Assembly: GCA_037447605.1 (NCBI GenBank)
Contig: CM074811.1
Location: 1,302,001 to 1,366,000 of the forward strand
DNA length: 64,000 bases
Source of the DNA: Zygnema circumcarinatum SAG 698-1b
Lineage: Eukaryota > Plantae > Zygnematophyceae
Reading direction: 5' to 3'
Under the pieces are notes generated by a model. That model ran no database searches, was not told the DNA's origin, and was given only the letters and a program-made list of their open reading frames with translations. The translations under genes and the position numbers were made by a program. Positions 9,687 to 60,846 of the stretch are shown one piece after another (position 1 is the stretch's first letter; each line of letters opens with the position of its first letter).

Positions 9687-9893
9687 CTCCCTCCCCCTCC
9701 CCCCTCCTCTCCTCGCCTCTCTCCCTTCCCTTCCCTCTCCCTCCTCCTGCCTCTCCCCTTCCCTCTCTCCTTCCCCCTCCTCTCCCTCTCCTTCTCCCTC
9801 TCCTTCTCCCTCTCCCCCTCCCTCCCTCCCTCCCCCTTCTCCCCCTCTCCCTCCCCTCTCCCTCCCCTCTCCCTCCCCTCTCCCTCCCCCTCC
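9687..9893. repeat. C/T tract (G/A on the PWP2 sense strand) abutting the PWP2 start codon
   Basis: ~200 bp of almost pure C/T on +, ending directly at the CAT of the PWP2 start. Confidence 0.9.
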
Positions 9894-10669
9894 GCCGCCG
9901 CAGCAGCGCAGCAGGCAGCGGCGGGAGGCGGAGGGGACGTGACGGGACAGCGGGAGCCGGGCTAGCGCCCGCGTGTTGCAGCGCGCGCATGGGATGGATG
10001 CTCATGACCAACATGAAACATTGTACAGTGCATACGGAACATTGTACATTGTACATTGCACATTGCACCAAAAACATTGCATACTAGGGATTAGACATCG
10101 GAGTGTCGTAGGCTTGGCATCGAGCATAAGGGCTGCTCAATCTTGAAACTGAGCTTGAAACTAGAACAGGCTTTCCGTCAAGTAGCTTTTCCAACTAATG
10201 CTTCCTCTTTCTCCTTCTTCCAATCTTCTCAACATTGGTAATCCCTAATCAGTTTTGTTCCTGAAATCCTCCAAAGATAATCTGGTGGCCAGAATAACCA
10301 GAATCAAACTAAACTTGCCCACTGCCCATTGCCCACCTCATGAAATGCCATGTTTTGGGCGTCTAGTAGCCCCAATAACAGCGCTAGCAGCGGCATCGAG
10401 CCGTTGGCACGCGCGCGCTCCAAAAGGGGACCTTGGCAAGGACGTCCCGCCACGTGGCGGCCGCGGGGAGGGAAGGAGAGAGAGGTCGTCCTGAGGGGTG
10501 CGTGCCCGCCCTCGGCCGCCATGGCTGCCCGCACTGCAGGGGGGCCGTGAAGCTCGCCCGCCGCAGCTCCTCCTCCACCCCCTGCTCTGCGCCGGCAAGG
10601 CCTTCAGGGTTTTTTCTCTGCTGCTTGTGGAGTGCCTGGGTCCTTGAGAGGCGGCCGCGTGGCAGAAGG

Positions 10670-25779: not shown

Positions 25780-25940
25780 CCCCCCTCTTCTTCTCTCCCT
25801 CCCTCACTACTTCCCCCTTCCTCGCTCCCTCTCGCCCTCCCTCTCCCTCTCTCCCTCTCTCCCTCTCTCCCTCTCTCCCTCTCTCCCTCTCTCCCTCTCC
25901 CTCTCCCTCTCCCTGTCCCTCTCCCTCTCCCTCTCCCTCC
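25780..25940. repeat. C/T tract, (CTCTCC)n-like; GA-rich on the UGE sense strand, upstream of UGE
   Basis: Read directly from the sequence. Confidence 0.85.
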
Positions 25941-26145
25941 ATCCCTGTCTGTAGGGCCGCGCGGATCTGGGAGCCTCCCTGCGGATCCCTCCCGCTGGCC
26001 AGGGCCGCCACGTGGCGCCCCGCCACTTGCTACCCCCGTAACCGTTCCATGCTAGCAGATCCGCGTTCCGTTTCCCACGGACGCGTTTGTACGCTACCCG
26101 TACGGCGGATCGCGCCGCCGACACGCTTTACTGCCCAGTTTGACA

Positions 26146-39470: not shown

Positions 39471-39693
39471 AGGGAAGGAGACGGAGGCGGAGAGGGAGGG
39501 CGAGGGCGAGGGAGAGGGAGAGGGAGAGGGAGAGGAGAGGGAGAAGGAGAGGGAGAGGAAGAGGGAGAGGGAGAGGGAGGGAGAGGGGAGGGGGGGGGAG
39601 AGGGGAGAGGGAGAGGGAGTGGAAGGGAAGGAGAGGGGAGAGGGAGAGGGAGAGGGGAGGGAGAGGGGGGGGAGGGAGAGAGGAAGGGGGAGG
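39471..39693 (+). repeat. GA-rich tract, (GAGAGG)n-like, in the putative 5' UTR exon of the carrier gene
   Basis: Read directly; followed by a donor-like AAG|GTATGG at ~39727. Confidence 0.85.
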
Positions 39694-40561
39694 ATCGAGG
39701 ATCAACGCAAGGAGAACGAGCAGAAGGTATGGTCCGGATGAAGCACATGGAGGAGAGGGAGAGGTGGAAGGGAGTGTGTGCAGAGTGTTTTGATTGATAG
39801 AGAGCGGGATCATTGGATAGAGTTATCGGAAGGGAAGGATTATATGATTATATGATTATATGTACCGGTTTGGCAGCTTTATTGGAGTGTCATCGCTCTT
39901 GTTGTGGCATGTCGGGGCGCTGACCATGTAGAGGAACTTCAACCTTCTCCTTAACGCTGAATACGAGCACCCTTTTTCAACTTTCGTAGGCATTCATGCC
40001 TCTTGCAAGCGTCTTAGGTAGAGTAAATTATGCGATAAAATGACATGAAAACATATGATATTGTCGGAAAGGAGATTATTTCGGCATGGCATTAGCTGGA
40101 TGGTTCCGAGACGTTCCTCAGGTCATGCCCAATCTTGTGCTTAGCAATCTTATGGTCCGGAATTCGCATAGATCATGTCATACGCTTCAAAGTCGAAATG
40201 CTCACGCTCAGTTATGAATGATTATTGTAACCTCACGAGTCTCATTCATGAAGGTAGTTGCTCGGTGTTTGAAGTTTCAGGAGCCGCAGGAAAGCATCCT
40301 GTTCACATCCTGCAGTCTCTATTCTGCCTCGCCAGGTTTTTTTTTTTTTGAAATCTATGCCAATGTCTTTTGTCCCTGCAGGTAGAGGAGATGTACCTCC
40401 AAGCAAATCACACTGATAGATTTCTTGTTTGGCGAACGTTGATTGCTTAACGAATTTTGCGGAGACTTCGCGACACCTCTAGTTTATCCCTCAACCGAAC
40501 AGCGTAGTGGGGGCAGTAAAGTCTCAAGGAGCTGAAACGCCCACTCATTTCAAGTCTGACG

Positions 40562-43500
40562 ATGTCATCACTTAGAAATGGTCAAGCCTTAAATTCAAGA
40601 TATTTCGAGTCAAAAGAAACCGTCTGCTCTGATGTCGGAGTATCCTATGCAGCATTTGAGCTTACGACGGTTCCATGGTCAATAAAGTGGGGCAAGCCTC
40701 TATTTGAAGAAGACGCTGATAAGCCAGATCTCTGTTTGGAAGCTTGCTCTGTGCCTTATCTTCGAAGACGACGTGGAATTCAGTTCCTTAGAGCTGCAGC
40801 TGATTCCTTGATCAATAAACTGCCTAAAGGCTGGAATTTCGAGGAAAGTGTTGGAAGTCCACCATTAGAGCAGAGTGAACATTCGCAAGGTGGGGAAATA
40901 GGTAGAGAAGTAGCTTTGCAGACATGGCGGAGGGCGGAGCTTCAAGTTGCATCCTTGTCAAGTGCTCTCCAGGAGCTTCCTAGAAGGGGGGGACAAACTG
41001 CTGAAAATCGGGGAAAGGAAGAACTTCGAGCAATGTTTGACGAGATTGATCAGAATCATGACGGGCAATTGACTGAGGCGGAGATCAGATCATATGCCGC
41101 TAAACGAGGCCTTCCCACAACATATGTGCGCGAGTTTTTGGATCAGGCGCGCTATTCTTGGAGACCTTTGCATATGCCTTGGGAGAATCAAACCCCCATG
41201 GCTTTGGCATCACTGAATTCTTCCTCCAGAAGGGTGAGCTCTTCTGCAACATGTTTGGAGGGCAAGGAAAAGTCGTTTGCAATGCAGAGTGGGACTCAAA
41301 CGATTCCTTGTTGTAATTCATTAGAAGGCATTGCCATTGAAAGCCTTTCACTTATGCATTAGACTAACAGAGTTTACAATGGCTTGTTTCAGCAACCCCG
41401 GCCGTCTTCTGTGGGTGGAAAGTCTGGAGGATTCCGGTGGCCTTTCAGAATACGGCCCTTCTTTGTTGCAGATGATGCTGTTGACTTTGAAGTTTTCAAG
41501 GCATTTGTGGAAGCGAAAGACGATGCTTTAAGAGATTCTTTCAATAAGATCGACCTCAACAAGGATGGAGTGATCACTGTTGCAGAGCTTGAAAAAGGAG
41601 TAAAGGTATGATATAAACTCGTTAATCTCATCTAACGCATATGCCTTGCGTACGGTCAGAAGTCTACAAGGGAAGTGCTCAATTCTCCTTAAGGTTCTTC
41701 GTGAATGTTGTGATTGGTGTCTTTCCTAGGTATGACGCTCTTTGCACATGATAATGGGCTGAAATAGTAATGATGAACTTCAGACGCACGGATGAAGTGT
41801 GTTTCTTCTTGAAACGGCGAAACTCTTATCGTGGAGTCCTTTGTCGAGGTTTATCCGTACCGATGGCTGTCAAATAAACATTCTGAAGTTGTCTACTTGG
41901 GGTTCTGATGGGCTTCAGCAAGTGCGAGTTATGTGCGGTCGAACAGGCGACTACTATCCGGTGAAGCGAGCATGTGTGACAAAAATGATGCGGAAAATGC
42001 AGAAAAGCTTACGTTCAACTGTGTCCTTCCAGGTAAAGGAGCTCCCACTTAGTTTGAACACTTTCACACCCCTCTCTTTATGGCAGCTGCAAAGAGACTT
42101 TCTTTGACTACCTGCACTTACATGCTGTCTTTACTTTCCCATACTCACAGGAATTTCGAGATTTCTTCACACTACTTCCAAGCTCAGAGTACCTTCTAGA
42201 CTATTGGCTTGATGCCAGTTGTTGTGCTCCCGGTCTTGACTATGGCAGCAATGTGCAGCTGCTTACAAGGGTGCAAGACTCATCTCGAAGTTATGCTCGG
42301 GGAGGCTCAAGCGGGAGTCCATGGAGTCACCTTTTGGCGGGAGGACTTGCAGGAGCGATCTCAAGAACAGTAACTGCCCCTCTTGAAACACTAAGGCTGA
42401 GAATGATGCTCTCTCCATCACAGAACCTGGGGACAGTCTCAAAGGTGCGTTCCTTTCTAGGAGGTGGATTCCTTATTCACATGATAGAAGGTCCTGCAGC
42501 CCTTTCCTTGTCTATCTCTCCAGAGTCACTGTATCATAGCAGCATTTTTCTTTCCTTTACACCTCACAGGGCCCTCACTTGAGGAGGGACGTGAGGTTTG
42601 AGCTGTATCTCTACCGCTCCCTCTTCCTGTGTCGTCTTTCTTCCTTCCTCATGTGTATCTCAAGCATATTTCTGAATGATCTCCATGAAGATGTTTTGCG
42701 ACTTGCATCCATGACGTAACGTGGAACCCCAGGATAGCAATTTCAGTACATCTCCAAGCTTTTATTCTCAAACGAATGTGGTGACTATGTATAGTTGAGG
42801 AGGAAGGTAACGGAGGTGATGGTGAAATGAATATTCTTTCGACTGAAGGCATTTACGTGCACATTCCTGGCAGGCGCTTCTTCGCACTGAAGGATGGCGT
42901 GCCTTCTTCAGGGGCAATTTCACCAATGTAAGACGTTCGACTGGCTATGCTGTCCCCCCTTCAGAAACATTACCGCAGAATTCTTGTGAAGTTGTTCTAA
43001 TTCACCTCTTTGCTGCAGGTGTTACGGTCAGCCCCACAAAAGTCAATCGATTTTTTTGCCTTTGAGGCCTACAAAGCCTTTCTGAGAGGCAAGAATAACC
43101 GCCAAGTGAGTGAGCCCTTGAAATGTGTTGATCTTTTTTTCGGTTCATGCTGGGGGGCCATCCTTTGACTCTGACATCGACATTTTGGATTGTTCTCTGA
43201 TCCTCTCTCTTCTATCATCCCCTTCTTTACACAGTCTCGACAAACTGAAAGCTTGCATATGATAGCTGCCGGAGCCATGGCTGGTGCAACTTCGACTCTC
43301 ATACTTTACCCACTGGATGTTGTAAGGAGTCGGCTTACTGTGCAAAGTAGCCAACAGGTGGGCTTTCCTCCCATTTTTTTCTCTTTTTAGGAAACAATTT
43401 GCATTTATATGGAAGTTTTTAGGTCTGGTGAGTTGAGATTGTTGCTCTTATATCTATGAATGCACCAGTCTTGCCGCCGAACCTAAACTCTCATCCTTCC

Positions 43501-44574
43501 GTTGCAGTACAAAGGAATTTTGGATGCATTGACAAAGATTCCACGCCAGGAGGGCTTCTTCGCGCTTTACCGAGGTACATAAATTCAGCCAAATGTTTTT
43601 TTTTTGGACAAGTATTGCTCCATCCAGCATTCACGTAGCATGAAAGCATGATTTTCTCGAGGAGACGAGCTTGATTTTGAATTAAAAGATTGGAAGGAAT
43701 TAGGATACTTGCTTATTTGCTGAAGTTTGGGAACAGGTTTGGGCTTGAGCATTCTTTCTATCATCCCAGAAGCTGCCATCACATACGGTTGCTTTGATGT
43801 GCTCAAGAGCACATATAAGCAAGTGATGAAGCAGGAACAAGTGGGAGTGGTGCCTGCCCTTGTGTGTGGTGTGACGTCAGCTTTTACCGGTATGCACTTT
43901 CCCCTCTCATCACCTTCACTGTCCTTACGCATTCCTTCCACTTATTCCTCACACTCGGCTTGCCTTCTCTCAAGGCTTCCAGCTTTTCATTTGCAGAAGA
44001 AAATTTTCTGCATTGCCAGTGCTTGCTTGAGTTGCGAGCTTGCACTCAATCCTGCCCATTTCCGTCTGTGGCATGCATCAGGATTGTCAGTGGGGTTGAG
44101 CCACTTCAATTGTTAGAATCATCTGCACTAATATAGCTATGGGAGTTTTAAGCATCCCTATTTGTAATTGCTGCCTTTTTTTGACGACGTGCACGACTGA
44201 AGCTTGATGAGCTTCTCTTCCTGCGGTTCTCTGTGCTGGCAGGGCAATTGGTAGCATATCCTTTGGAGCTGGTAGCAAGGCGCTGGCAAGTGGGAGGTGC
44301 AGCTGTGTACAGAGGCATAGGGGATGCATTCAAGCAGATCATTGCGAAGGAAGGGTTTCAGGGGCTGTACCGAGGCATTGTACCAGCATCCCTGAAAGTT
44401 GTGCCTATGGCAATTGTCAGTTTTGGAGTATATGAAGGAGCAAAGCAGGTGCTGGTACAGTTCTCAGAGTGGGAGGAGAGGAGACAGTTGGAGGAGGCTT
44501 TGCTGGAGGAAGAGAGAAGAATGCGAACAGTGACACACTATCTCCCCCCAAATAGGGAGACGATGGAAGGGTGA
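40562..44574 (+). CDS. EF-hand-containing mitochondrial carrier (ATP-Mg/Pi carrier, SCaMC/APC-like)
   Basis: EF hands FDEIDQNHDGQLTEAE and FNKIDLNKDGVITVAE; three carrier repeats (PLETLRLRM, PLDVVRSRL, PLELVARRW) with EG..G/A.(Y/F)RG motifs. Confidence 0.85.
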
Positions 44575-44777
44575 CGCACTACTGGTGCCGCTCGGTCTCA
44601 CTGCGACGTGTCTTGAAGCCATCGTATGTTATATTCTCATCAATGTAGGATCGAATTATAAATCTGTCGATTAATTTCAGTTTATTCTTGCACTTGACCG
44701 GAACATCGTTCAACGCACCACCTTTGGCGCGAAGTTTCAAGGGACGGTTATGATATTACGTGCAAATAATTTTACGA

Positions 44778-45923
44778 CATTGCAGCAGCCCCCTCTCCTC
44801 CCACAAATCCTCCGCCTTTAGCGGTCCCCTTCATTTCTCCAAGAGAACTTCTAGCAGTGCAGGATTCAATGCCCGTTTTTATTGATAGAACCAAGCCGGC
44901 TCCATCTACAGAAAAATGTTTCATTGCAACAGCCGCTTCGGCTGGATACTTTCATGGACGAGTGGGATACGCCTTCAAGTGCAAGTCGTAGTGGTTTGAA
45001 TCTTTTAGCAAGAGGGTTACATAGAAAACATTCTATGGAGAATAGAAGGTTGTCAATGAAGTGCCAGTGGAACCATGTGTTTCAAACAACTGGGCTTTCT
45101 TTTGGATGCGAGCACGAGAACGACAAATAATGAATCAGTTTGAGTATAGCTTTGAGGTGTCACGATTTTGTGAGGCTTTTTAGTAGGAGTCAATATACCG
45201 TTCCAAATCTCCCTTTGTCAAGCCAATTTCCAAATGTTACCCTGAACACATCAACTTCAAGAGTGATAGTAAAAGAGTCTTTTTCATTGATAAGTAGTTT
45301 GATGCAAAGCAAGTTGGAGTTATGCCAAAAGCGGGGTTGGAGTTTTTCTGTCACCCTTGTGGCCCGAGCCATTGCCCAAGGGTCTTCTCTGCCATTCTTT
45401 TGTTTTTTTTTATTTTGTATGAGTCGTTATTCTTTAGCTTTTGTTTGGGTTGTTTTGTTTGCTTTTTCCTTCTCCTTTTTGCTTTTTTTGCCTTTTGCTC
45501 TTTTTTCCCCTCTTTTTCACTCTTCAATTGTTAATTTTTAGCGTTGGACATGCTTGCTGTCTATGCAGAATATCCTATGGAGAACCTTCACTTATAACCC
45601 AAGTAAATAGTTACCACGATGTTCGTTTTTGTACATAAAGTCAATTCAAATTTGTGACAAACCAATAACTATTGCTGACAACCATAGATAGTTGGTATCT
45701 TTATGAATAAATATAGGAATGTGTAACCAGTGTCCCTATAAATTTCAGCGATTAAAGTTAGTTGTACAAATCAGTATAACAGTTTTATTTCTTATTGCCA
45801 AAATGTTAACTCGCCAAAAATGTTGAAAAGCAGGTTCGCATTAGAAGGTGCTGTTTTTGGGAACGACTGGACTATGATTGAAAAAAGAGTTGCAGGGGAC
45901 GAAAAAAGAAGGATGCAAAGCAT
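44778..45923 (+). pseudogene. Inverted partial duplicate of the Dicer-like 3' end (part of penultimate exon, last intron, part of last exon)
   Basis: Colinear with the reverse complement of 46416-47771 (e.g. [25 protein letters not shown]). Has an internal deletion of ~190 bp, frameshifts and an altered splice donor. Confidence 0.92.
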
Positions 45924-46099
45924 ACGAGTAACAAGTCATATGATACCTTTTGATCCACAAGGGTGATCTTCTTTTGGTTGAACTCTCGTGAAAACTTTCC
46001 CTTTGGCAATCCAAACCCATCAACTTCAAGATTGGAGTCTTCTCCTTCCCTTTTTTTGTCTATACATTTGATAAGGTTTATTTCTAGATTGCTACAATT

Positions 46100-46179
46100 G
46101 ACAATGTTGTATCACCATATGAGAGCACAACAATAATGAGACAATGTTGTATCACCATATGAGAGCACAACAATAATGA
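46100..46179. repeat. Perfect 40-bp tandem duplication in the spacer of the inverted repeat
   Basis: GACAATGTTGTATCACCATATGAGAGCACAACAATAATGA twice. Confidence 0.9.
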
Positions 46180-46358
46180 ACACTGCGTGACTAACGAAAC
46201 TTATACAAAATTCAACTATTGAGTATATGTACAAACCGACAAAACAAATGCTGACTTTTTCCCCTCTCTCTCCCCCTTCTCTCCCTCTCCCTCAAATTAA
46301 CACAAACGAGAACCTAATCCCCCACACCTTGGAAAAAAAATCTGACTACAAAATTTGG

Positions 46359-49300
46359 TCAATTCATGATTTCACCTCGTTCTTTCAGTTTGCGAAGTAT
46401 GTCTGCAGCAACAGCATGCTTTGCCTCCTTCTTTTTTCGTCCACTGCCAACTCCTTTTTCAATCACAGTCCGGTCGTTCCCAAAAACAACACCTTCCAAT
46501 TCAAACCTGCTTTTCAACATTTTTGGAGAGTTAAAATTTTGGCAATAAAAATAAGACTGCTATACTGATCTGTTCAACTAACTTCTAATCGCTGGGATTC
46601 ATTGGGATTCATAGGGACACGGGTCATACATTTCTACATGATTGATTTCATAAAGATACCAAACATCTACGACTGTCAACAGTACTTATTGGTTTCTCAC
46701 AAAAAATAATTGACGTCATGTATAAAAACGAACATCGTGGTACTATCCACTTGTGTTAAAAGTAAGAAATTTCCATACGATATTTTGCATACACAACAAG
46801 CATATCCAACGCTAAAAATTAACAACCAAAGTGTTAAAAAAAGAGAAAAAAAACAAAGGACAAAAAAAAGGAACGAAAAAAAAGCAAACAAAACAACCCA
46901 AACGAAAGCTAAAGAATAACGAGTCATACAAAACCAAAACAAAAACAAAAGAATGGCAGTGAAAACATACCTGGGGCAATGACTCGGGCCACTTTGCTCC
47001 TCATGGGTGACAAAAAACCTCCAACACCTCCTTTGGCATAACTCCTCCAACTCACTTTGCATCAAACTATTCGTCAATGAAATAGATTCTTTTTCTACCA
47101 CTCTTGAAGTCGATGTGTTCGGGGCAGCATTTTGAAGTTGGCATGGCCAAGGGAGACTTGGAACAATATACTTACTCCTACTAAAGGCCTCACAAAATCG
47201 TGACACCTCAGAGTTAGACTCAAATTGATTCATTGGTTGTTGTTCTCGTGCCCCCATCCAAGGGAAAGCCCTCAAGTTGTTTGAAACACATGGTTCCATT
47301 GGCACTTCATTGACAACCTTCTCCGTAAAATGCTTTCTACGTAACCCTCTTGCTAAAAGATTCAAACCACTATGACTTGCACTTGAAGGCGTATCCCACT
47401 CGTCCATGAAAGTATCTAGTCGAAGGGGTATAGGAAGATAGTCCACTAGAGGACTCGTAAAAGGAGGAGAGGTTGGTGCAATGAAATCGTTTTCTATAGG
47501 CGCAGTACGCTTGGTTGCTCGCATAAAAGCGACTATTGAATCCTGCCCAGTTAGAACTTCGCTTGCAAAAGGCAAGGAAACTGTTAAAGGTTGAGGATTT
47601 GTAGGAGGGGAAGTGGTTGTTGCAATGAAACATTTTTCTGTAGGTGGAACCGGCATGGTTCTATCAATAAAAGCGGGCATTGAATCCTGCACTGCTAGAA
47701 GTTCTCTTGGAGGAGTGAAGGGGACCGCTAAAGGCAAAGGATTTGTGGGAGGAGAAGGGGCTGCTGGAATGAAATCCTTTCCTGTAGGTGGAGCAGGCCT
47801 CTTCTTTACCAATTGTATATCTTCCTTCACAACTTGTTCACCCACTTTCTCGGCTCCATCTTCCAGAACATTCAACTGGAATTGTCCTCCTACATGTTTT
47901 CCTGTTTTGCTCGTTTCAACGATCTCTATATCCATCTTTGTCTCACCTTCGACCTGCACCACCTTTCCTTCCTACAAGCCAGCTAACAATGTAATGTTAA
48001 GGACAACGTCTTTGCAAGTATGAATACCAGAGAGCTTTAGTTCATCCATATTACAACATTGATTGATACAACATTGATTTTTTTGCATTTGTGCAACAAA
48101 GGACACATGTACAACTTCAATATTCTAGCCAATGGTACACGTACAGAATTGGAAACTCACATTCAATGCCTTCAGTGCCTTAGCTGAAGCCATCTTTATG
48201 CCTGCATCCTTCCGTCTTTGCTCCACCTCCCCCATACAGTGCCCATTTACCAGCGCTTCCACCTGATACCCTGCACTCAATATCTTGACCTCGAAGACAA
48301 GAGTCCATTTACGCGCTTGGCATAATTCTAGAAGTTGTCTCCTTGGATGTTGTTTCAGGGTATTTACAGTCGGAAATGGCTCGAAGAATTTATTGAGATG
48401 ATTCCACACTAAAGAGAAGTCAAAGCAAGAGTCAACCAACATCGCTCCGGCCAAGGCTTCCAGAAGATCTCCCAAGACCTGCGAAAAGGCAGGAAACCAA
48501 GGGAATAACATAGTCAAACATAGTTGGAAAATCTCCCTCTTCCTCCCACCCCTCTGTCCATCCCTCTCTGATAAGGGTTAAAAAAGTAGCGTGCAAAACC
48601 ATCCTTAAGAGTGTTCGCATGTAGCCAACAATTTTACCTTTGGCGCTTCATTTTCTCCATCTTCAAAGGAGAGCTCAGACCGTTCATGCCCTTTACGCTG
48701 CAATTCTGCCTTCTGTCTGTTCACGAAATATTCAATGCTCTCCCTCAAGCTTTGTGAACTGTACTGCAAATACTCCTGCAGCTCCAACTGTGGTTTGAGT
48801 GCAATCAGAGCAAAGCTATTATTGTTCACAGAGGCTGAACGAAGGTCGGTCAGACTGCCCGGGGACAGGTCGGGATTTGTCATCTCCAAATGCTGGGTGA
48901 CAGCAAGGTCCAAAAATGCATCTCCAAGGAACTCAAGTCTCTGCCACAACACCACATGAAAAAGGCAGAAATCAAAAAAAGAGAAAAAAAAAGCAGCAAT
49001 TAACACATAATGACTGGTATACACTGAGCCGCATACCTTTCTATTGCTTTTTCAAATGCATATGGAATTGCACGCAAAAAGTTTGTTCCTCGAACCTCAT
49101 AGCAACGCGTATATGATTGCATGTCTTGAAAAGAAGCATGCGTGAAAGCCTCCGCCAAAAGCTCCTTATTTTTGAAGGTATAACCTAATGTGCATTGGAG
49201 CTTATCCAAACAATTTAGCTTTTCAGCCATCGCCTCTCCCTGCTTCTTTCCACTCTGCCAAACATATTCGTTCCCAACCTTCGCCAACTCTACAGGGATG

Positions 49301-52300
49301 CCCACCCATTCCATGAGCAAAAGACCACCTTCAAGTCCAATCTCTGATTTCAACTCTTGCCAATACACTCCAATCAATGCTTCCACCATGTCTGCAATGG
49401 CCTTCATAAGGACTCGATTCCTTTTTTTTTTCTTCTTTTCAGGATCAACTATTTTCTTCTTAACCTCCACCTCGCCATCTATGTCCATACTCATTCTTTC
49501 CGTTACTTTCCCTTCCGTTACCTCGTCCTTCATTGAGTCAAACGCTTCTTTCTCAAGAGTTTCAATTGAAGACTTTTGGGGCAGCTCTTGTTCTACCTGA
49601 GTTTCTATATCTTTCTCCAAGTCTCTAAACCTTCCACTTCTATTGTGGCTGCATTCATTAGAAGAGAGAGGAAGTCCCGGAGCTGCCCAATCTTCAACAG
49701 TAAAATGGGTAACTCGGAGATAATTCTGCCCAAGGATCAATCACACGAACACACGACCACATGACATCATTCATATATTCCATTTTTCCATACAATTTAT
49801 GAAAAGGAGTCTCAAATGTTTTGTAGGTCAAGGCCAAAAGCATACCTGAAGTCCTTTATTAAGGGCATGCAGACAAAGAGTTACGTTGCACACTTCTTGC
49901 GAACGCTTCTTAGTTAAGAGGCCTTCGTGATCCTCAGGATTTGAGTGAAAAAAGTGACATGTAACACCATATTTCAACACTGTGTCTCCAAGGAACTCGT
50001 GCCTCTCTAGGTTGAATTCATCATGGCATTCAGCAGATGTCAAAGCCTCCATCACCTACACAAAGCCCATGAAATCCCTCAATATATCTCCACAACAAGA
50101 AAGAACATTCGCCTGTAAGTCTATGATGCTTCTCCACCCATTAACAAAAGCCTCAGATGACATTAAAAAAACCAACTATCTAATTGATTTGCAGACATTT
50201 ATCTAAAGTCATTTGAGAAAGCTAACAATGCATTTGATGAAATGCAGGCTTCTTCATATAATACAAGACATTACCTTGCATCCTCTCACAGTCTTCAAAA
50301 TGGGTTTCTCCATCTCGTCAGCGATACGATCCCTCAGCTCACAAGCTCCCTGCAGCATCTCTACGCGATGCATGACAGATGGCAGAATCTGAGCGGCTCG
50401 AAAGTATGGGCTCGGAGCAACCAGCCAACAGAGTTCAGGAGGAATTTCTGCGAATGCCCTCTCAGATAAAGGCTTCTCTGAAAGTTCCACTTCTGTTTTG
50501 CAACACCGACAACAAAACAAAGCATCAGATGTGAAGCGGATGTAACGTTTATAAGTTGATTTGGTTCCATGGTAGATGATCAAAATATATGTTTACATTC
50601 GTGCCAATTACGCGCAATTATCTATTAGCTTGTTGTGATGCAAATTGAAGGACAATAAATAAAGATTCTGGCAGATCTACCACTTCTTCTTCTTCACATC
50701 TTCCCTTCCCCCTTCGCCCTCACTCCCATTTCCCACTCTCATTTCCTTCCATGTGTCTTTCAGCTGATAAAGTTAATATACAGAAAATTGAAAACAAAAA
50801 AGCGATCAAACATGTATTCTGAAAAAAATTGGAATGTGATACATGCCTATTGTAGAAGGATGGACAAGGCTGCTCCGTGCTTTGGTGACCCGCCGCACTG
50901 AGAGCATTGGCTGCTTTGGAAACTTAAGCTGCCAGTTGTGCCTTTCACAAGCAACGAGTAGCAATTACAAACATTAGCTGGCTAAAAGCATAGAACTTGA
51001 TTGTTTACTAGTTATGTCGAAGCAAGGACAAGGTAAAGAGAGCGGAAAGGGGAACGAGACAATTGCACCATTGCAATGCAAGACAAGGAACTTACTTTTT
51101 ATAGAAATACTCTTCGTAACTTTTGTATTTCGAGTCTGGAAATGGACTCTCAGCTGTTAGATCTGTCCTCACAGCGTCAATATAATATTGACATCGATTA
51201 TGAATCGCATTTCCAGTCATCCCAATGATTTCTTCTACTGCCATTGAACCCATGGCAGTAATGAGGCGACCTTCACCTTCACTCTCTTTCACTTGAGCCA
51301 TGGCATTTTTTATTTGCTCTACAAATCCTTCTTTCCTTGCTTTCGAAAATATATCGATCGCAGATTCAACAACGCTCCAATCGACATCAATACCAGTGCC
51401 TGAAAGCTCATTCTTAGTGACCAAAGGGAGCAAGCAATATGCTCGCTCGCTATTCCAAAGAGTCTGACAAACAAGACCATTGGCAACAGTTGGCGGAATG
51501 GAAGTTTGAAAAGAAGTTTCAGAAGGACAAGCACAGCGTGTACAACGCAGAAGAGCTTCACAAAAGAACTCGGAATGAAATGCCTTTGCACATTCGACCT
51601 GGAGAAAGTAAAAAAAACGAAAAAAAAAGAAAGAGCATACTTTTAGAAGCGTGCAATCCAGAATGGCCTCCTCATTATCTTTTAGATGATTCGGTAATGT
51701 TCCATCAATTTCAGTACAGAAAAGAAAAACGGTACAAAAAAAGTACTGAAACGACTCTCAAGAAGCTAATGCAAGCCTTCCGATTACAGGCACCATCTGT
51801 TATTTGCCATCCAAATGCAAAACCCACCTGTCGCTTATCCATTGAGACCGTCCCACATGGCGTCAAGGTAGCCCTCCCACTCCCTCCGTAGGGGAGGGAG
51901 AGTCTAAGAGATGTAGAGGCTGCCTCGGGATCAAGCATCACCTCAGTGAATAGCCCCATCAATCCAATATCCCTCGTGGTCCAACTTGATGGACTCGTCC
52001 TTTCAACGTTGATACTGATGGAATACACAAATAGGTGCAGGATGTCCTCTGACACAGATCGTAAACCATTTGAAGTTCCCTGTAGAGCTCGCGGCACCAA
52101 GACTTTCAATTCCACGATTTTGGGGATCACTGCAGGTCAAAATAAAACCAAGATTCAATAAATGAACCGTTACGGATGACAACGAGCCTTTACTTCCACA
52201 GATTTCTGCAGACCAGCTTCAAAGCTCAATGGGTTTGCTCCAAACAAGAAAGTGGGAAGGGCGGCCATAGTTAGCAGACGAGCCAAAACCCACCATCGAC

Positions 52301-55300
52301 AAGCTAACCATATACTATAACCAACGTCTATTTCATGCAATTTTAACAAAATCCTTTAATAATAACATTTTTGGCCACAATATGACCAACCTTTAGCTTC
52401 CGCCTTATTTGAGTCTTCTCCCACTTCCTCGTCTCCAGTAACTGGCAGCAAGTGGTCGGTCAAAGCATTAAGCGCATGCAACTTTCTTATCACTTCTAAG
52501 CAAGCCGCTTGTTTTGCTGCATTGGTGCTTCTTTTGATTGGCCCTCGCACCAGTTGTGCCTCAATAGGAGCATTGGAGGGAAGGCGGACTTGCGTCACAA
52601 AGCCATCTTTCTCTTGCTCTGTCACGAAGAGTGGCTGCAAAATGCAAAAACTGCACCTCCGCAACAGTTCAGGGAAGGTGTTAGAAACAGCATCACGATT
52701 GAAGTTCAGAAGGAGTAAAAAGTTGGTTTGGATACCTAGATGAATAGAGATAGCATGGAAAATGGAAAGTAGCCACTCCAATCAGCCACCACTCATTATG
52801 GAGGGGCAAACATTCTACTCTTCTTTCAAACAATTGCCAACAGAAACGTGAAAAACACACAAACTTCGGTGAAAAAATCTCACACCAAAACTGTGGCTTT
52901 TTTTTCTTTCCCACACTACAACTACAGCTTGCAAAATCTGAGCCTCACAAATGCAGCTCATCTTACAAAACAGCTATGACTTGCAAACCTAAGCAAGAGG
53001 GAAGAATAAAAAGCAATTCAGAGTTTCTGAAAAAACAAACTTTTTTCTTTTTTTACTGAAATATACTATGTTTCAAATTCTATTTAGACTTCTCCAAGTA
53101 CCCATACATAAGCCGAAAGCCATAGAAACCACTTCAGAAACATGAATCTTGTCAGCAACAAGAAAACTGTCGCATGAAACACAATCGCCCCTGCTCCATT
53201 GACTCAATTTCCCCCATCCTCCTATCAAAAAGTATAATCATCGCTCCCACAACTTGCCGCACCTGCCACTTGGAAGCTTACTGCAGTAGTGATTGACGAG
53301 AGCAACACTTCCATCAGTGTCAATAACTGCCCCTGTTGAGTCCACCCTATAACTCTCTGCCACTTTATAGTCACTCTCCATCAGTTGGTCGAGGCTCGTC
53401 CTCTCGGACACCTCCTTCCGGATCAAATCTTCACTCTCTAACAGTTGGGAGACTTGGTACCTTTCATCCGAGTCTCTGATGCATACAAGCATCCGCAGCA
53501 ATATTAATGTTAGAGAAGATATTCAACTGTCAGATCTTAGGAACAGATTGCCCACAAAACGTGACATCTCCGAGAAAGTTTTTCTCCCAGCAGTTCAAGA
53601 TAGTCAGCTCCATACACGATAAAAAAGCACGGGTATAGTTTTCATTTTAAATTACGTAAGTGATTATAAGCAGACTCATTTCACTGAACATGGCCAAAGC
53701 AAGAAAGTAAGTACCGTCGAACGAAGATCACGAATTTTGAGTTCGTCATACGAGCACGCCCACGAGACTGAGTGAAGGAACAAACGTTTTTGCTAAGGTC
53801 AAACAGCAGCACGGCATTGCATGCTGGAATATCCACTCCTTCCTCGACTACATTTGTTGATATCAGCACGTTTATCTGTAAGATGGCACCGCGAATGATC
53901 ACAAATGAATAGGGGATTGGCAGACTGCAAAACATGGCATCAAAACCCTTTCCATCCCAGTTCACCTTGCAAGGCTTAAGGGCGAGTATATGAAGATTAT
54001 ATATGTAACCTGACGCTTCCCATAGCCCGAGCCGCGCAACAATCTTGGAACACTCCCATCTTTGACTGCAACTCTCATACAGAATATCCTGTATATATCC
54101 GAAAGTTGGGACAAAAATTCTTACCTTTGTGGCTACTCCGTATCAGATGCCTTTTATAGGGTGCAGTGAAGCCTACAATGGCAAAATCATGCAGTGCAAT
54201 CCTGCAGTTTCCATCTACAGATTCTAAAGCAGTCCGCTCCGCACACTTTTATTGGGATAACTTTAGGAGATATTGCGCTACGTGACAAGATTAAGATTTC
54301 TATGCAATGGCGTCTTGAATACTTTTGATCGAGGTAAACTTTTTTTTGAGTCAGACATTCTAATGAAAGAATGAAACGAATATTCTATTTGTTTCTATCG
54401 TCAAAGAAAGTTCTAGACTGACATTGAAAGAACCGTATACCCCTCAGAAACGGGGCAGCAAAAGAGTTCATCGGGATTCTTCTTCATTTTACCTCTCCTT
54501 TTCTGAAAGCCTTCAAAGTATCTTCGAGCTGAGCTCGAGTGCGGTGCCTTCCTCCAGCAATAGCTTTGCATTTTATAACATCCTTCAATACGACTCCCAA
54601 GAGATTCGCCAAAACATCGACATCTACCACCCGTTCGGCGAACACAATACAATGGAACTCGCTGCCCTTGGTCTCAACTCTGGTAAAACAAAAAAAAAAA
54701 CCCAAGAAGAAACATTAAGGATTATGGATTGCAACTTGGTAGAGGAATGCCCGATAAAAAAACAAGCAATTCTTGGACATTCACAACATCGATCGCATTG
54801 AAAAAAACGTAACAAGTGCTGGTTTCATTCATGAGAGAAGCATCTGTAAGTACAGAAGAATGCCCCAACGCATTCTTACCTGTTGTTGAGAATTTCCAAT
54901 ACGAGCAACTCCACCTTAGGAGTCAGAAGGCCCTCCCTTACTGCTAACCGTAGCTGCTCCCTGATTCGCTCTTCTCGAGAAGCTTCATCCATTAGATCGC
55001 CGACTGCATCCTCAATATTATACGTAAGTTTGCGTACATGTGAGAGAGAAAGAGAAAGAGAAAGAGAAAGAGACGCATTGAGACAACCAAATGACCAACT
55101 GAGAAGGCAACTCAACATGACTAGATTCTCTAAAGGGCATCTAGTCACTTAAGAGACCGAGAATGAGGGAAGGGGTGGAGATTTTGGGAACGTGAGGAAG
55201 CGGAAACAAGCCTTTGGTACAATAATCAATATATGCTGCGTGTGCTAGTCCAAGGGGCACTGGATAAGGGACACATCACTACCATACAGTGTTCACTTTG

Positions 55301-58300
55301 AACTATCTCACTCAGTATCTACGAACAAGGCAATCACTTGGTAATATTCCTACAACAGTGGTATGGGGACAATAGTGAGTTGAAGCATATAGCTTACCTA
55401 CTGGGAGTTCACACCGAAGGCGTTCTCGAGAAAGTTCCAAAATTCTTTTTTCTGAATTTATCAACGAATCTCTGATTGACGCATCCCATTCGTACTGTAA
55501 AATATTGCTTGTTTCGACATCTCTGTACTTCACCTCAGTAGCCTGCATCGAAGACGAGACGAAGGTTGCATTGTTAAAGACAATAATAAGACAAGCTAAG
55601 GATGCAACCTCTAGACCAAGCAGCCATTGTTCGACTTGCAGCAATACTCTCACCTGAAACGCACAATAGAGTCCGAGGTCCTCAACGCAGTGGCTCAGCG
55701 TGCTGACCAATCTTCTAACCCGCTTCCGAATCCTTCCAATTGTTGAAGACTTTTGAACCTGCAAACACAATCGAGCCACTCTCTAAGGGAGAACAAGGAT
55801 TTGAAGGCAAGGAAAGCAAGCAAGCTCCCTGCTTGCTCCCCCTCCCGTACCTTCCCCTCCCAAGTTTTTCCTTCATCGTTCTGCTTTGCCGTGATGGATA
55901 ATTCTCCATATTCAAAACTCCTATTGACAAAATCCCCTGTCAAAGCGATTTTCCCTCGATGTAGGAGCATGGCCAAACTTTCAAAGGTGAGATGATCAAC
56001 TGGTCAAATTGACCACGTTGATTAATTTCGAAAGGACAACTGCACCACACCTCCTCAAAATCTGCTCGCACCTGATCAGAATTTGCTTGTTCCATATGCA
56101 GACTGTTCAGAAACTCCAAAGCTGCTTCAGTGGCCACGGACGGGGTATACAGCTCATATGTTTTGAGGATGGTCCGAGGTGCCGGCATGATTGCTTCGAA
56201 GTCTTTTGTCATCTCGACGGTTGCCAACTGCTCAACAGCACGTGCAATGACAGAATTTACTACCCTATGTATGACCAAACACCAAGCAAGTTCTAAGATT
56301 GGCAGTCTGCATGGTGGAGAAATACTGCATTTCTCAACATGCCTTTGTCTTCATCTACAATTGATGCACGACTTTGAATGGGATTTACTATAGCGTGTCA
56401 GTGGTAAAGCATTAATTCAAACAACATGACGGAAACACATCAACATCTTTAGACACAGGGTGCATCATCGACGCTGCGCATTTTTGCGCTACTGGAAAAG
56501 CTCAAGTAGAGAAGGGATCATTAATCAAGGATGAATATGACTGAAACAGAGGGATGGATCTGTTAAAACCTTCTAAAAACCTTTTCTCTTAGAAATCACT
56601 GCATACCTTAGCATCCAAGATATCCTCAAGGTCCTGAAGCTTCTTAGCGCAATCCTCTTCCGAAGTTACACCTGCAAAAGGTTTCTAGTTTAAGAATAAT
56701 TCATGGATCAATGAATGGTTGCATGGACGAAAAGTTAAGAGTTGATTCTGTGCTTTTGTAAATCCTGAAAAAAAAAACATGCCCGATTCTGGCACAATGA
56801 TTGTAACGATTCTGGCAAAGTGATTGCAACGCAAAACACAACGCAAAACACAAACCATAAAAGTGTGAGCAAAAAAAGGTCACCTTTGCTATTGACTGGT
56901 GATGCGGTCATACCGAAGATCTTGGGCCTTTTGTCAATTGCCACATTCCTGTAAAAATTCTGTTCGCCCGATAACCTTGTCAAAATAGTGTTGGAAGCCA
57001 AAATAATCTTTCGTTGAAAGACTCGATCAAATAGTGAATTCACTGCTTTTCACTCGATACGAGTAACTAGCTCAGGTCACATCTATCATATCGATTACAA
57101 TTGGCAACGAATCCAACTCACATACATACATAGAAAGCACTGCCGGCTGAAACAAGCAAAAGTAATGATAGAACATCAAACACTCTTCCAGTCTGTGATC
57201 CTTGGTTTGAGTACACAGACAATCTATCTAAACTAGTATTGACGATAGACTTGAATCAATGCTGTAAAAACCAAAACCACTGTAATCAAGAGCATTCCAA
57301 AACTGTGACCGTTACTTTGTTCAAAGCTTCTTCTGGATAAGAAGCAGACTTCTGACTTCGGCAAAAGATCCTTTCTGAAAGCTATAGAGCATGGTTCACA
57401 AAGTGAAAGCTAGCTTACACGCATTATGACGACGTAAGGATGATTTCTTTGCGCGTGATGACATTCATCGAGGATGAGCAGGTCCACAATTTCCAAGCTC
57501 ATGAGTGCGTGTTGGAGGCTGTTAAGGAGCAGCTGTGGAGTCATGACTAGCACCTAAACATGACCTCCATACCACAAATGCAAAGTCATCAGCAACTTGG
57601 GAATTTCACAGATCAAAAAAATATTTAAAAATTACAATAGCGAGATGGATGTCCAGCCTGGCCTTTGACAATCTCGATAAATTAAGAAAAAAAAAAAAAG
57701 GGAGAAGATGGTAGACCTCGAGGACTTCAACTTAATTATGGACAGAATCAGTGAATTGAATATTACCACCAGATCAATGACGAATACTACAGTGCACAAC
57801 ATCAAACAAACGAGCAGGAATTGAAAGGTGCCAAAGAGTACTCCCATGGCACACTATTGGAGGAAAACTAAAGTAATTCTTACGTCGTAATTTTCCACCT
57901 CCGTTCTCCAACGAGAAATGTTGTACGAGTCCCCAGAAAGTCGCTTCACTTTGAGATCATTATCCTTGTCGATAACATCCGTTTGCTGCGCAGAACATGC
58001 GAAAAAAAATATTTAGCATAGGTGCCTGAATCAATAACGTGTAGTGCTGCGAATGCAGAATCGTCAACAAACAGCACTGGCAAAGCCGCTATTGGTTTGA
58101 CAACCTTAAGAGAAGAGTAGACAACAATCAGGAAAGCAGCTCACTTGCAGCGAAAGAGGTACACTCGGCACAAGGAAAACGATGATCTTCTTCTCCTTGA
58201 GATTTCTCAAGTGAGCCATCCGAGACTTCATCAACATTACAGCTATGTGAGTCTTTCCCGTTCCTGTTCCGAGGCACACAATAGTATTCTGCTCGGTGGC

Positions 58301-58711
58301 TCGGGTAAAGAGCTCTGACTGGTAGCTGCATACAAGAGAATACAAGCAAGAAAAATGAAGCCAGAGAGAAAGCGCAACAATGAATAAAAGACCGTGGAAA
58401 GGAAATTTTCCCCAGTGAATTCAGCTGGTTCGAGGAAAGAAATTCAACAGTGATGCCAGAAAAATAAAAAGGTTATAATTAAAAAAAAATGGGGAGTGTA
58501 TGGCATAATTGAAAAGAGCTGAACAATTCACGAGTCTTCTAGACTTTTGAGGAAACATGATTACTGACCTCCGAGGTTCGAAAATGAACCGAGCATTTTC
58601 GCTTCCCATATCTTGTCTCTTCTTGTCACTTTTATCCAAAATTTCTACTTGTGTCTCTGCAGTTCTCTTCTTGCTGTCATGGCTGCCATGATTTGACGAG
58701 TTGGAAGCCAT
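46359..58711 (-). CDS. DCL: Dicer-like RNase III endonuclease (helicase, DUF283, PAZ, 2x RNase III, 2x dsRBD), about 20 exons or more
   Basis: YQSELF...[37 protein letters not shown]...[23 protein letters not shown]-like [32 protein letters not shown]...[11 protein letters not shown], dsRBD1 [14 protein letters not shown], dsRBD2 [19 protein letters not shown]|FELEG...[14 protein letters not shown]. Stop at 46359. Paralog class not assignable by eye. Confidence 0.95.
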
Positions 58712-59012: not shown

Positions 59013-60846
59013 CAGGCCTCTTCAAATAGGGGATTTCGGCTTAAGATAGGGGACTGTCCCCTAACTTGGTTTTGTAAAGGGTAGTGATATTTCCACCCCT
59101 TTTTTGGATCCAAACACCCCTTCCCGGCCGGGCAGATTTCAAAAGGGATTAAAAACGGAAAATGCTTTTTTCACACCTTTTTGGAATCGATACCCACCTT
59201 CTTCCGTCGGCTGATTTTATTTTTGCTAACCAAGGAAAATGATACCCCGTCACTGCATTTTGAATACTGTATCCCGCCTAGCTGAAATTTTTTTTTGAGG
59301 GAAAGAAATATCTGCCAGCCCGAATCCGCTCGAAGTGGAAGATCCGTCCGCCACGAGATTGTTCGCCGGTGTCCGTCCTTCACACGTGTGTGTCAATCGC
59401 AGCTGTCGATTCCCTCGCAGATCGCATCACTGCAGGTCACCGTTCGATCTGCAGCCGGGCTCGATCTTAGCGAATGGAAAGCGCCCACGAGTCCCGTCAA
59501 AGCCGAATCGCACATGCGAGTGCGCGCGTCGATCGGCCCGAGATCTCGTAATTGTTAGCTCCCAGCCAATCAACAGGTGCCACGTGTTACATTTTTGACG
59601 TGGAAATTTTGATTGGTCCAAGCTCTCAATGTACGAAATTTTGGGTACCTCAAAGTTGCGACCGTACGACATTTGTACGAAACAACTTTTGAGGCGACTT
59701 TGGCGGGATACGTGGGCACGTGCCATTCGCTGTGACCGAGCCCGGCTGCAGAGTGATCTGCCGTGTTGCGATTTGCGAGGGAATCGACGGCTGCGATTGA
59801 CCGCACGCGTGAAAAGAAATTCAGGTAAGCGGGATATTCAAAATGGGGTGACGGGTTATCATTTTCCTTGTTTCGCAAAAATAAAATCTGCCGATGGAGG
59901 GTGGGTATCGATTCCAAAAAGGTGTGAAAAAAGCATTTTCCGTTTTTAATCCTTTTAGAAATCTGCCCGGCCGGGAAAGGGTGTTTGGATCCAAAAAAGG
60001 GGTGGAAATATCACTACCCTTTGTAAAAACACGTAAATATGGACTGTACGGACGAAACCGTGCACGTACGGACAAGAATTTTGTGGAGACCTTACTTCAT
60101 CATTTCCCAACACTGCTACCGTCGAGTCTGATTTTTCAGTAATTGGATGGGAGAAAGACGAGTTTCGAAAGAGGTTGACAGCCTTTTCATTGGAAGGCAT
60201 TCTTGACTGCAAACAGTTTGATAGTTTGACCGCTCTTCGAGGGTCTCTTTGAGTAGTTTGCATCACTTCTATAGCTGTCTTGTTCAGCCTAAAACTCCTA
60301 AGGGAGTGAGACCATTTTTCATTTCATTTCTAATTTTAGTTCCTATTTCAGTTTTTCTTTTGTGACTACACCTAGAATTTCAGAGGTTATAATTTGGAAT
60401 AGAGTTTTTGTGAGGAAATTTCAAGACTATGATGGATTCTAAAGTGATACTTGGAGTAATTAATGATGGATGGAAAAGGAAATAGAGAGCTTAGGATTGG
60501 ATCTACAAAGTTTCAGTGCAATTGGGTTTTTGAATAAGCAACTATATGTTGTGATTGCCAAATGCACAGTTGTTCTAATTGATTGGTAAAATTTACCAAT
60601 CTATAAGAGTCGAAGAGGTTGCACCAGTTTTTAAAGCCGTGTTGTTATACCAACAAGTAAAGTTCATATACATCATTGCTATCGTGGTTGCAAATGCAAT
60701 TCATTTCCATTTTGTTTTTAACCAAAAAAATGCTTTTTTGGGGCTTGTGTGGTATTTAAGTTGAAATCACGTAAACTAATCTCAAAATCTTACATACATA
60801 AGCTATTTACGATATTTAGGGGATCTCCCCTATTTGAAGAGGCCTG
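59013..60846. mobile_element. Non-autonomous hAT element (middle layer)
   Basis: Perfect 21-bp TIRs CAGGCCTCTTCAAATAGGGGA (59013-59033, 60826-60846); perfect 8-bp TSD ACTGTACC (59005-59012, 60847-60854). No transposase ORF. Confidence 0.9.
59079..60019. mobile_element. Long-TIR (Mutator/foldback-like) non-autonomous element (inner layer)
   Basis: ~200-bp TIRs starting GGGTAGTGATATTTCCACCCC (59079-~59290 versus ~59815-60019); 8-bp TSD TTTGTAAA (59071-59078, 60020-60027). Superfamily is inferred. Confidence 0.85.

What the first reader, a model, noticed from the sequence alone, without database searches (positions are those of the whole stretch)
44778..47771. Dicer gene followed by an inverted copy of its own 3' end: candidate self-targeting hairpin
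Seen: 44778-45923 (+) mirrors 46416-47771 (-), with a ~490-bp spacer containing the Dicer stop codon (46359). The copy keeps the intron, so it arose at the DNA level. It is frameshifted, looks roughly 80-90% identical by eye, and is flanked by a short direct repeat (ACGA at 44774-44777 and 45924-45927). Any transcript spanning both arms would fold into ~1 kb of dsRNA: either Dicer pre-mRNA reading ~440 nt past its stop, or read-through from the carrier gene that stops ~200 bp before the copy. Known: long inverted repeats are DCL substrates, inverted gene duplication is the accepted route to new hairpin/miRNA loci, and Arabidopsis DCL1 is feedback-regulated by miR162 and the intronic miR838 hairpin. 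Inference: this Dicer carries a cis hairpin that lets it cut its own message and make siRNAs against its dsRBD exons, a feedback loop switchable by poly(A) site choice.
Basis: partly seen in the sequence, partly recalled or inferred. Interest (0 to 1): 0.88.

Follow-up and report, generated by a model that had tools for sequence, protein, structure and literature searches.

The report
Inverted copy of Dicer gene tail
An alga's Dicer gene really does have an old, decayed, back-to-front copy of its tail beside it, but the RNA data show the copy inside the neighbouring gene's messenger while Dicer's messenger ends short of it, so a self-cutting hairpin could form only in rare read-through RNA and is unproven.

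Summary
The inverted repeat is real. 44778-45923 (+) matches 47771-46416 at 88% over 1,129 aligned bases, keeps the intron, is frameshifted, and has a 4-5 bp direct repeat at its ends. Independent DNA contigs cross both junctions at single-copy depth. The Dicer-like gene is full-length and expressed; the host is a streptophyte alga, probably Zygnema (inferred).

The proposed mechanism is not supported at bulk level. In three spliced RNA runs from three studies, the carrier transcript runs into the copy, mostly ending at about 45307-45432. On that strand the copy is Dicer-sense, so it cannot pair with Dicer mRNA. Dicer's 3' UTR ends at about 46065 (or 45963), short of the copy, and no contig crosses 45898-45962. 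Substitutions look neutral, with no significant G:U bias.

Best reading: a repair-type duplication partly absorbed as the neighbour's 3' UTR. A PAI1-PAI4-like minority read-through making siRNAs stays open, because contigs drop rare RNA and no small-RNA data were available. The scan noted this layout before at other genes of this genome (TOUGH, SUVH4, RsgA, AAH; unchecked notes), so it is not specific to Dicer.

The parts
44243..44574 (+). Last coding exon of a mitochondrial-carrier gene, convergent with Dicer; stop at 44574
   Evidence: Pfam Mito_carr E 4e-17; GT-AG joints in three RNA runs
44575..45432 (+). Carrier 3' UTR (strand inferred). Main coverage ends at 45307 (X13, from bin arithmetic), 45336 (X11) and 45432 (X7), so about 530-650 nt of it are Dicer-derived
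   Evidence: Spliced carrier contigs run to 44866 in all three RNA runs; copy-specific contigs follow at depth 34-186
44773..44777 (+). Left copy of the TACGA direct repeat
   Evidence: Sequence
44778..45923 (+). Arm A: inverted, decayed copy of the Dicer tail (exon part 44778-45380, intron part 45381-45833, last-exon part 45834-45923)
45436..45897 (.). Low-level RNA over the proximal half of arm A (X7 45436-45817, depth 12.8; X11 45464-45897, depth 3.3; none in X13); strand unknown
   Evidence: table 8
45923..45927 (+). Right copy of the TACGA direct repeat
   Evidence: Sequence
45924..46415 (.). 492-nt spacer; 45898-45962 has no RNA contig in any of the three runs
45998..46079 (+). Possible degenerate, gapped second copy of arm A 45210-45300 (filler-like)
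   Evidence: Score 50.5 against a maximum of 44.5 in 500 shuffles; scoring was chosen after seeing the match
46077..46082 (-). AATAAA in the Dicer 3' UTR; candidate main poly(A) signal
   Evidence: RNA coverage stops near 46065 in X7 and X11
45963..46358 (-). Dicer 3' UTR, longest extent seen
   Evidence: X13 contig 45963-46509
46359..46506 (-). Dicer last coding exon (second half of dsRBD2 and stop)
   Evidence: Pfam dsrm E 8e-4; splice joint
46507..46970 (-). Dicer last intron, 464 nt; covered by RNA at depth about 6-10 in all three runs
46416..47771 (-). Arm B: the parental Dicer segment
46971..47971 (-). Dicer penultimate exon: 333-codon Pro-rich linker with an internal repeat of about 144 nt, then the first half of dsRBD2
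46359..58711 (-). Full-length Dicer-like gene: helicase, DUF283, PAZ, RNase IIIa, RNase IIIb, two dsRBDs (start codon inferred)
   Evidence: Exon-wise Pfam, PDB and tblastn matches; spliced contigs of about 5 kb

Best explanation
An old local duplication copied about 1.35 kb of the Dicer tail, inverted, into the gap between Dicer and the convergent carrier gene. The likely route is repair of a staggered double-strand break using the neighbouring gene as template (inferred from the retained intron, the 4-5 bp direct repeat and the lack of terminal inverted repeats). The copy then decayed with no sign of selection (indels, stops and even codon positions are shown). Its distal 530-650 nt became part of the carrier's 3' UTR (RNA coverage shown, strand inferred), where it reads in the same sense as Dicer mRNA. 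Both messengers normally end without crossing the spacer (shown for abundant RNA only), so the hairpin is latent and has little or no regulatory role (inferred).
For: RNA contigs link the spliced carrier to arm A in three of three runs and never link Dicer to arm A. The Dicer 3' UTR as observed has no stem: z +1.7, against -13.3 once it is extended into the arm. Both genes are well expressed. Substitutions by codon position are 18/27/18; intron divergence (0.16) exceeds exon divergence (0.115); G:U-compatible changes are 55 versus 39, p 0.12 raw and 0.54 after composition. There is no clear C-to-T excess by methylation context and no CpG/CHG depletion specific to the arms. Unchecked notes report the same layout at several other genes of this genome, including non-silencing ones.
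Against: Contigs show presence only; a rare or quickly diced hairpin would be missed. At Arabidopsis PAI1-PAI4 most transcripts also end in the centre, yet a minority read-through gives siRNAs and methylation (PMC3203196). X13's Dicer RNA reaches within 40 nt of the arm. Low-level unstranded RNA lies over the proximal half of arm A in two runs. The distal 317 columns are more alike (93.7%) than the rest (85.7%), permutation p 0.003, which uniform decay does not explain. The proximal half leans to minus-strand G:U pairs (32:14, raw p 0.011, adjusted 0.23).
Confidence: 0.6

Rival explanations
1. PAI1-PAI4-like leak. A minority of Dicer transcripts pass the main poly(A) site and fold back (or their minus-strand 3' fragments pair with carrier or Dicer mRNA), and are diced. 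The siRNAs methylate the arms or mildly trim both mRNAs. This is a by-product of the layout, not a selected switch.
For: 158 nt of read-through into the arm already gives a stem of about 90 bp with the last exon (z -13.3). A second minus-strand AATAAA lies at 45789, inside the arm. Full read-through gives 16 paired runs of 21 nt or more counting G:U and 80 perfectly matched 21-mer windows. Intron-retaining Dicer RNA exists. Precedent: PMC3203196. RdDM-like genes are reported in charophytes (PMC11194755).
Against: No crossing contig in three runs; no methylation-type mutation signature; 12% mismatch plus 19 indels, and mismatches reduce inverted-repeat methylation in transgenes (PMC9263138).
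Confidence: 0.27
2. One reading: a selected autoregulatory hairpin. A switch to a distal poly(A) site, for instance under stress or infection, makes Dicer cut its own message and produce siRNAs against its dsRBD exons and the carrier's 3' UTR.
For: The geometry allows it. The Dicer 3' end differs between studies (about 46065 versus 45963). Feedback on Dicer genes is common: miR162, miR838 and a 5' UTR stem-loop on DCL1 (PMC12825306), miR6026 on tomato DCL2 (PMC6120711). Unchecked notes list similar fold-backs at TOUGH, SUVH4 and SGS3 in this genome.
Against: No spanning RNA; no significant compensatory bias, whereas a note on a Ran-derived hairpin in this genome reports a strong one (s1-387195, unchecked); divergence looks neutral; the same layout is noted at AAH and RsgA, which have no silencing role; conservation could not be shown.
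Confidence: 0.1
3. Assembly artefact: a second haplotype placed beside the gene.
For: None found. The best DNA holder could be the sample the window was assembled from.
Against: DNA runs from three studies hold the words; contigs cross both junctions at single-copy depth; RNA contigs carry copy-specific sequence joined to the carrier exons.
Confidence: 0.02

Closest known systems
Arabidopsis Ws PAI1-PAI4 inverted repeat (PMC3203196)
   Same: Tail-to-tail gene-derived inverted repeat; most transcripts end in the centre between the arms; only read-through can fold back.
   Different: There the read-through, siRNAs and methylation are shown. Here the copy is a 1.15-kb fragment only 88% identical, no read-through was seen, and the copy is transcribed as another gene's 3' UTR.
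Endogenous inverted-repeat siRNA loci (endoIRs such as IR71) and proto-MIRNA inverted duplications (PMC10827316)
   Same: Long imperfect inverted repeat able to form a DCL2/3/4 substrate; origin by inverted duplication of gene sequence.
   Different: No transcript holding both arms and no small RNAs shown; one arm is the working gene itself, not a non-coding locus.
Dicer feedback loops: DCL1-miR162, DCL1 intron miR838, DCL1 5' UTR stem-loop (PMC12825306); tomato DCL2-miR6026 (PMC6120711)
   Same: A Dicer message could be cut by, or targeted through, its own enzyme.
   Different: Those use short hairpins inside the normal transcript or trans-acting miRNAs with demonstrated products. Here the partner arm lies beyond the observed mRNA end, and the gene is not shown to be DCL1.
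Templated insertion or filler DNA at double-strand breaks in plants
   Same: Nearby sequence copied with its intron, short junction repeat, no transposon ends, decay afterwards.
   Different: The mechanism is inferred from the junctions only; the empty ancestral site was not seen.

Membership tests
endoIR / hairpin-siRNA locus | Long genomic inverted repeat able to fold into dsRNA | tested here: met
endoIR / hairpin-siRNA locus | One transcript contains both arms | tested here: inconclusive
   No contig crosses 45898-45962 in three RNA runs, so it is not met for abundant RNA; rare RNA cannot be seen in contigs
endoIR / hairpin-siRNA locus | 21-24-nt small RNAs from the arms, dependent on DCL | not testable with these tools
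   No run listed was identifiable as a small-RNA library; only contigs were held
endoIR / hairpin-siRNA locus | Substitutions biased to keep pairing on one strand | tested here: not met
   55:39 overall, adjusted p 0.54; proximal half 32:14, adjusted p 0.23
PAI1-PAI4-type methylated inverted repeat | Most transcripts end between the arms | tested here: met
   Dicer RNA ends at 45963 to about 46065
PAI1-PAI4-type methylated inverted repeat | Cytosine methylation over both arms | not testable with these tools
   Only indirect proxies, which show no clear signal
cis-natural antisense pair | Convergent transcripts overlap | tested here: not met
   Furthest carrier-side RNA 45897, furthest Dicer RNA 45963
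MIRNA gene | One precisely excised miRNA/miRNA* duplex from a stem-loop | not testable with these tools
   No small-RNA reads
Full-length plant Dicer-like protein | Helicase, DUF283, PAZ, two RNase III domains with acidic catalytic residues, dsRBDs; spliced and expressed | tested here: met
   the E-x-x-G-D and D-x-x-E motifs are present in both RNase III domains; tested exon by exon
DCL1 clade | Groups with DCL1 in a phylogeny | tested here: inconclusive
   Exon scores against DCL1, DCL3 and DCL4 are mixed, and a liverwort DCL3-clade protein also scores best on DCL1. A related-species Dicer (P0121, long branch) joins the clade holding named DCL3 and DCL4 (SH-aLRT 94) in a quick tree with no identified DCL1. 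DCL1 is reported absent from Zygnematophyceae (PMC7994812)
Transposon-captured fragment (Pack-MULE type) | Terminal inverted repeats around the fragment | tested here: not met
   No inverted pair of 14 nt or more at the copy's ends in 44560-46420; homology to Dicer runs right up to both direct repeats
Retrocopy | Intron lost, poly(A) tail | tested here: not met
   The intron is retained

The most novel reading that the evidence does not exclude
A zygnematophyte Dicer regulates itself through a kilobase cis hairpin formed only when a distal poly(A) site is used, with the neighbouring carrier mRNA as co-target or decoy; several silencing genes of this alga (Dicer, TOUGH, SUVH4, SGS3) may share such fold-back tails as an miRNA-free feedback design.
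Probability: 0.1. Interest if true: 0.78.

Novelty: new member of a known kind. Interest (0 to 1): 0.38.

Why it matters
[quoted passage not shown] If read-through makes siRNAs here, it would be a Dicer feedback loop built from a long cis hairpin in a lineage reported to lack DCL1, and a natural snapshot of the inverted-duplication route to hairpin loci. On present evidence it is more modest: a gene fragment taken into a neighbour's 3' UTR. The 12% arm divergence lets every read be assigned to one arm, so the test is cheap.

Tried and rejected
Mis-assembly: rejected. Retrocopy: rejected, the intron is kept. Transposon capture: no terminal inverted repeats. Coding role of the copy: frameshifts, stops, no third-position excess. 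Carrier read-through as a dsRNA source by itself: rejected, the copy is Dicer-sense on that strand. Overlap of the two 3' UTRs: not seen. G:U bias test: not significant after composition. Methylation footprint: no clear signal. Sister-species check: the nearest relative found (SRR8128903-7; SNW1 82% identical) differs at 64% of four-fold sites, far older than the 12% arm divergence, so it cannot test conservation; its Dicer contig ends after dsRBD1 and has no long inverted repeat. The loose end at 46853 in X6 looked like a paralog but is window position 48992. The sigma-70 scan is irrelevant to a eukaryote. Searches for papers on SRR8128903 and on rice LGC1 found nothing, one PAI paper was not held, and no zygnematophyte small-RNA study turned up. 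The organism name is inferred, not shown. The spliced Dicer and carrier proteins were searched exon by exon by reference; the joined model was left out.
Full report
Observation. Self-BLAST of the window and a gapped alignment confirm that 44778-45923 on the + strand is the reverse complement of 46416-47771. Over 1,129 aligned columns identity is 88.0% (K2P 0.13): 89.4% in the penultimate-exon part, 85.5% in the intron, 90% in the last-exon part. There are 19 indel events, one a 188-nt deletion in the copy. The flanking direct repeat is ACGA, extendable to TACGA; a 4-mer match has a chance of about 0.005. An unspliced minus-strand RNA across both arms folds into one long stem.

The genes. The minus-strand gene is a full-length Dicer-like gene: exons match helicase, Dicer_dimer, PAZ, two RNase III domains and dsRBDs, and the acidic catalytic motifs are present in both RNase III domains. 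The last three introns are confirmed by RNA joints, and the exon phases fit. The copied part is the Pro-rich linker and most of dsRBD2. The plus-strand neighbour is a mitochondrial carrier; an EF-hand ORF at 40562-41362 probably belongs to it (inferred). The class of the Dicer is unresolved. Exon scores against DCL1, DCL3 and DCL4 are mixed, and pairwise scores mislead here because a liverwort DCL3-clade protein also scores best on DCL1. A Dicer from a related species joins the clade holding named DCL3 and DCL4 in a quick tree with no identified DCL1. Wang et al. report no DCL1 in Zygnematophyceae (PMC7994812).

The host. SNW1 from this window is 66-75% identical to zygnematophyte and bryophyte proteins, so this is a streptophyte. 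DNA runs assemble to 69-92 million letters in five of six cases, and other runs under the same species label hold none of the words. That fits Zygnema circumcarinatum SAG 698-1b (71 Mb), where strain SAG 698-1a is now treated as a different species (PMC11096116). The name is inference; the tool codes it.

Is it real DNA? Six DNA runs from three studies hold 96-97% of sampled words of 44300-48400. The mis-assembled haplotype idea is rejected, with the caveat that one of these samples may be the assembly's source.

What is transcribed. X7, X11 and X13 come from three studies and show GT-AG splicing, so they are RNA. All are contigs: no strand, no true ends, rare molecules dropped. Three things hold in all of them. 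First, the spliced carrier contig runs past its stop into the copy to 44866, where a 39-nt block identical in both arms breaks it. Copy-specific contigs then continue to 45336 (X11, depth 47), 45432 (X7, depth 34) and 45307 (X13, depth 186, end worked out from bin depth). Second, Dicer's spliced 3' contig extends into the spacer; coverage stops near 46065 in X7 and X11, just past an AATAAA at 46082-46077, and at 45963 in X13. Third, nothing covers 45898-45962. Weak contigs lie over the proximal half of the copy in X7 (45436-45817, depth 12.8, starting 3 nt after the main contig) and X11 (45464-45897, depth 3.3), and none in X13. They sit closer to the carrier side than to Dicer RNA, but their strand is unknown.

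Why this changes the mechanism. On the + strand the copy reads the same as Dicer mRNA. A carrier message ending inside the copy is therefore not complementary to Dicer mRNA and forms no hairpin. dsRNA needs a crossing of the spacer or minus-strand RNA from the copy. The Dicer last exon and UTR as observed fold no better than shuffles (z +1.7); extended 158 nt into the arm they form a stem of about 90 bp (z -13.3).

Signs of selection. Substitutions in the exon part fall 18/27/18 on codon positions, so the copy shows no coding constraint. G:U-compatible changes favour the minus strand 55:39, not significant raw (p 0.12) or after composition (p 0.54). The proximal half shows 32:14 (raw p 0.011, adjusted 0.23), mostly explained by the T-rich intron. 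C-to-T rates by context and CpG/CHG ratios show no arm-specific methylation footprint, though these are weak tests. One result is unexplained: the distal 317 columns are 93.7% identical against 85.7% for the rest (permutation p 0.003). Gene conversion, a two-step origin or constraint could each give this.

Origin. Retained intron, junction direct repeat, no terminal inverted repeats and an adjacent donor point to templated repair of a staggered break (inference from established plant repair biology, own knowledge). A gapped patch at 45998-46079 resembles part of the copy itself and may be filler from the same or a later event. Conservation could not be tested: the nearest relative found is saturated at silent sites and so split long before the duplication.

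Context. Other notes of this scan describe inverted gene-tail copies in the same genome at TOUGH, SUVH4, RsgA, AAH and another convergent pair; the TOUGH follow-up reached a similar verdict. These are unchecked and are not independent support. They suggest a recurrent mutation type, which lowers the surprise of finding one at Dicer. That several involve silencing genes is a lead, but my search words and reader attention both bias toward them.

Comparison. The closest system is Arabidopsis PAI1-PAI4, where most transcripts end in the centre and a minority read-through still yields siRNAs and methylation (PMC3203196). This keeps a leak model alive (0.27). Dicer feedback loops are known for DCL1 and tomato DCL2 (PMC12825306, PMC6120711), but with demonstrated small RNAs or binding. 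The locus works at most like an endoIR (PMC10827316); it is not shown to be one.

Verdict. The feature is real and the description accurate. The feedback function is unproven and not favoured: latent duplicate absorbed into the neighbour's UTR 0.60, by-product siRNAs 0.27, selected switch 0.10, artefact 0.02. Novelty: new member of a known kind. Interest 0.38.

Noticed in passing
window 46344-46471, 46079, 47728-48175 (run X6): A contig of about 128 nt at single-copy depth differs at 5 places from the Dicer last exon; a joint 47728>48133 and loose ends at 46079 and 48175 lead to sequence not in the window. This suggests another near-identical Dicer fragment or paralog elsewhere, not seen in the three RNA runs.
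   Followed up: partly
window 46100-46179: Perfect 40-nt tandem duplication in the Dicer 3' UTR; the X13 contig holds one unit (strain difference or assembly collapse).
   Followed up: partly
window 46507-46970: The last Dicer intron has RNA coverage of about 6-10 in all three runs, while the next intron upstream has about none. An adapter on one X7 contig would make it Dicer-sense if the library is dUTP-stranded (unknown).
   Followed up: partly
window 46971-47971: Long Pro-rich linker with an internal repeat of about 144 nt (47449-47798, 73% alike) between the two dsRBDs; the related-species Dicer P0121 ends about 29 aa after dsRBD1.
   Followed up: partly
window 44778-45100: The distal part of the copy is significantly closer to Dicer (93.7%) than the rest (85.7%); unexplained.
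   Followed up: partly
window 45380-45384: The copied 5' splice site lost 3 nt and no splicing of the copied intron is seen in carrier RNA.
   Followed up: partly
window 59064-60034: Foldback-type element with nested inverted repeats (138-nt ends, 94% complementary) upstream of Dicer, inside further inverted repeats at 59013-60846; already noted by the scan.
   Followed up: no
window 20400-21595: About 1.2 kb of G/A-rich low-complexity repeat; related tracts at 9686-9899, 25780-25950 and 39471-39694.
   Followed up: no
window 61873-63744: Intronless SNW1/SKIP gene divergent from Dicer; used here to place the organism.
   Followed up: partly
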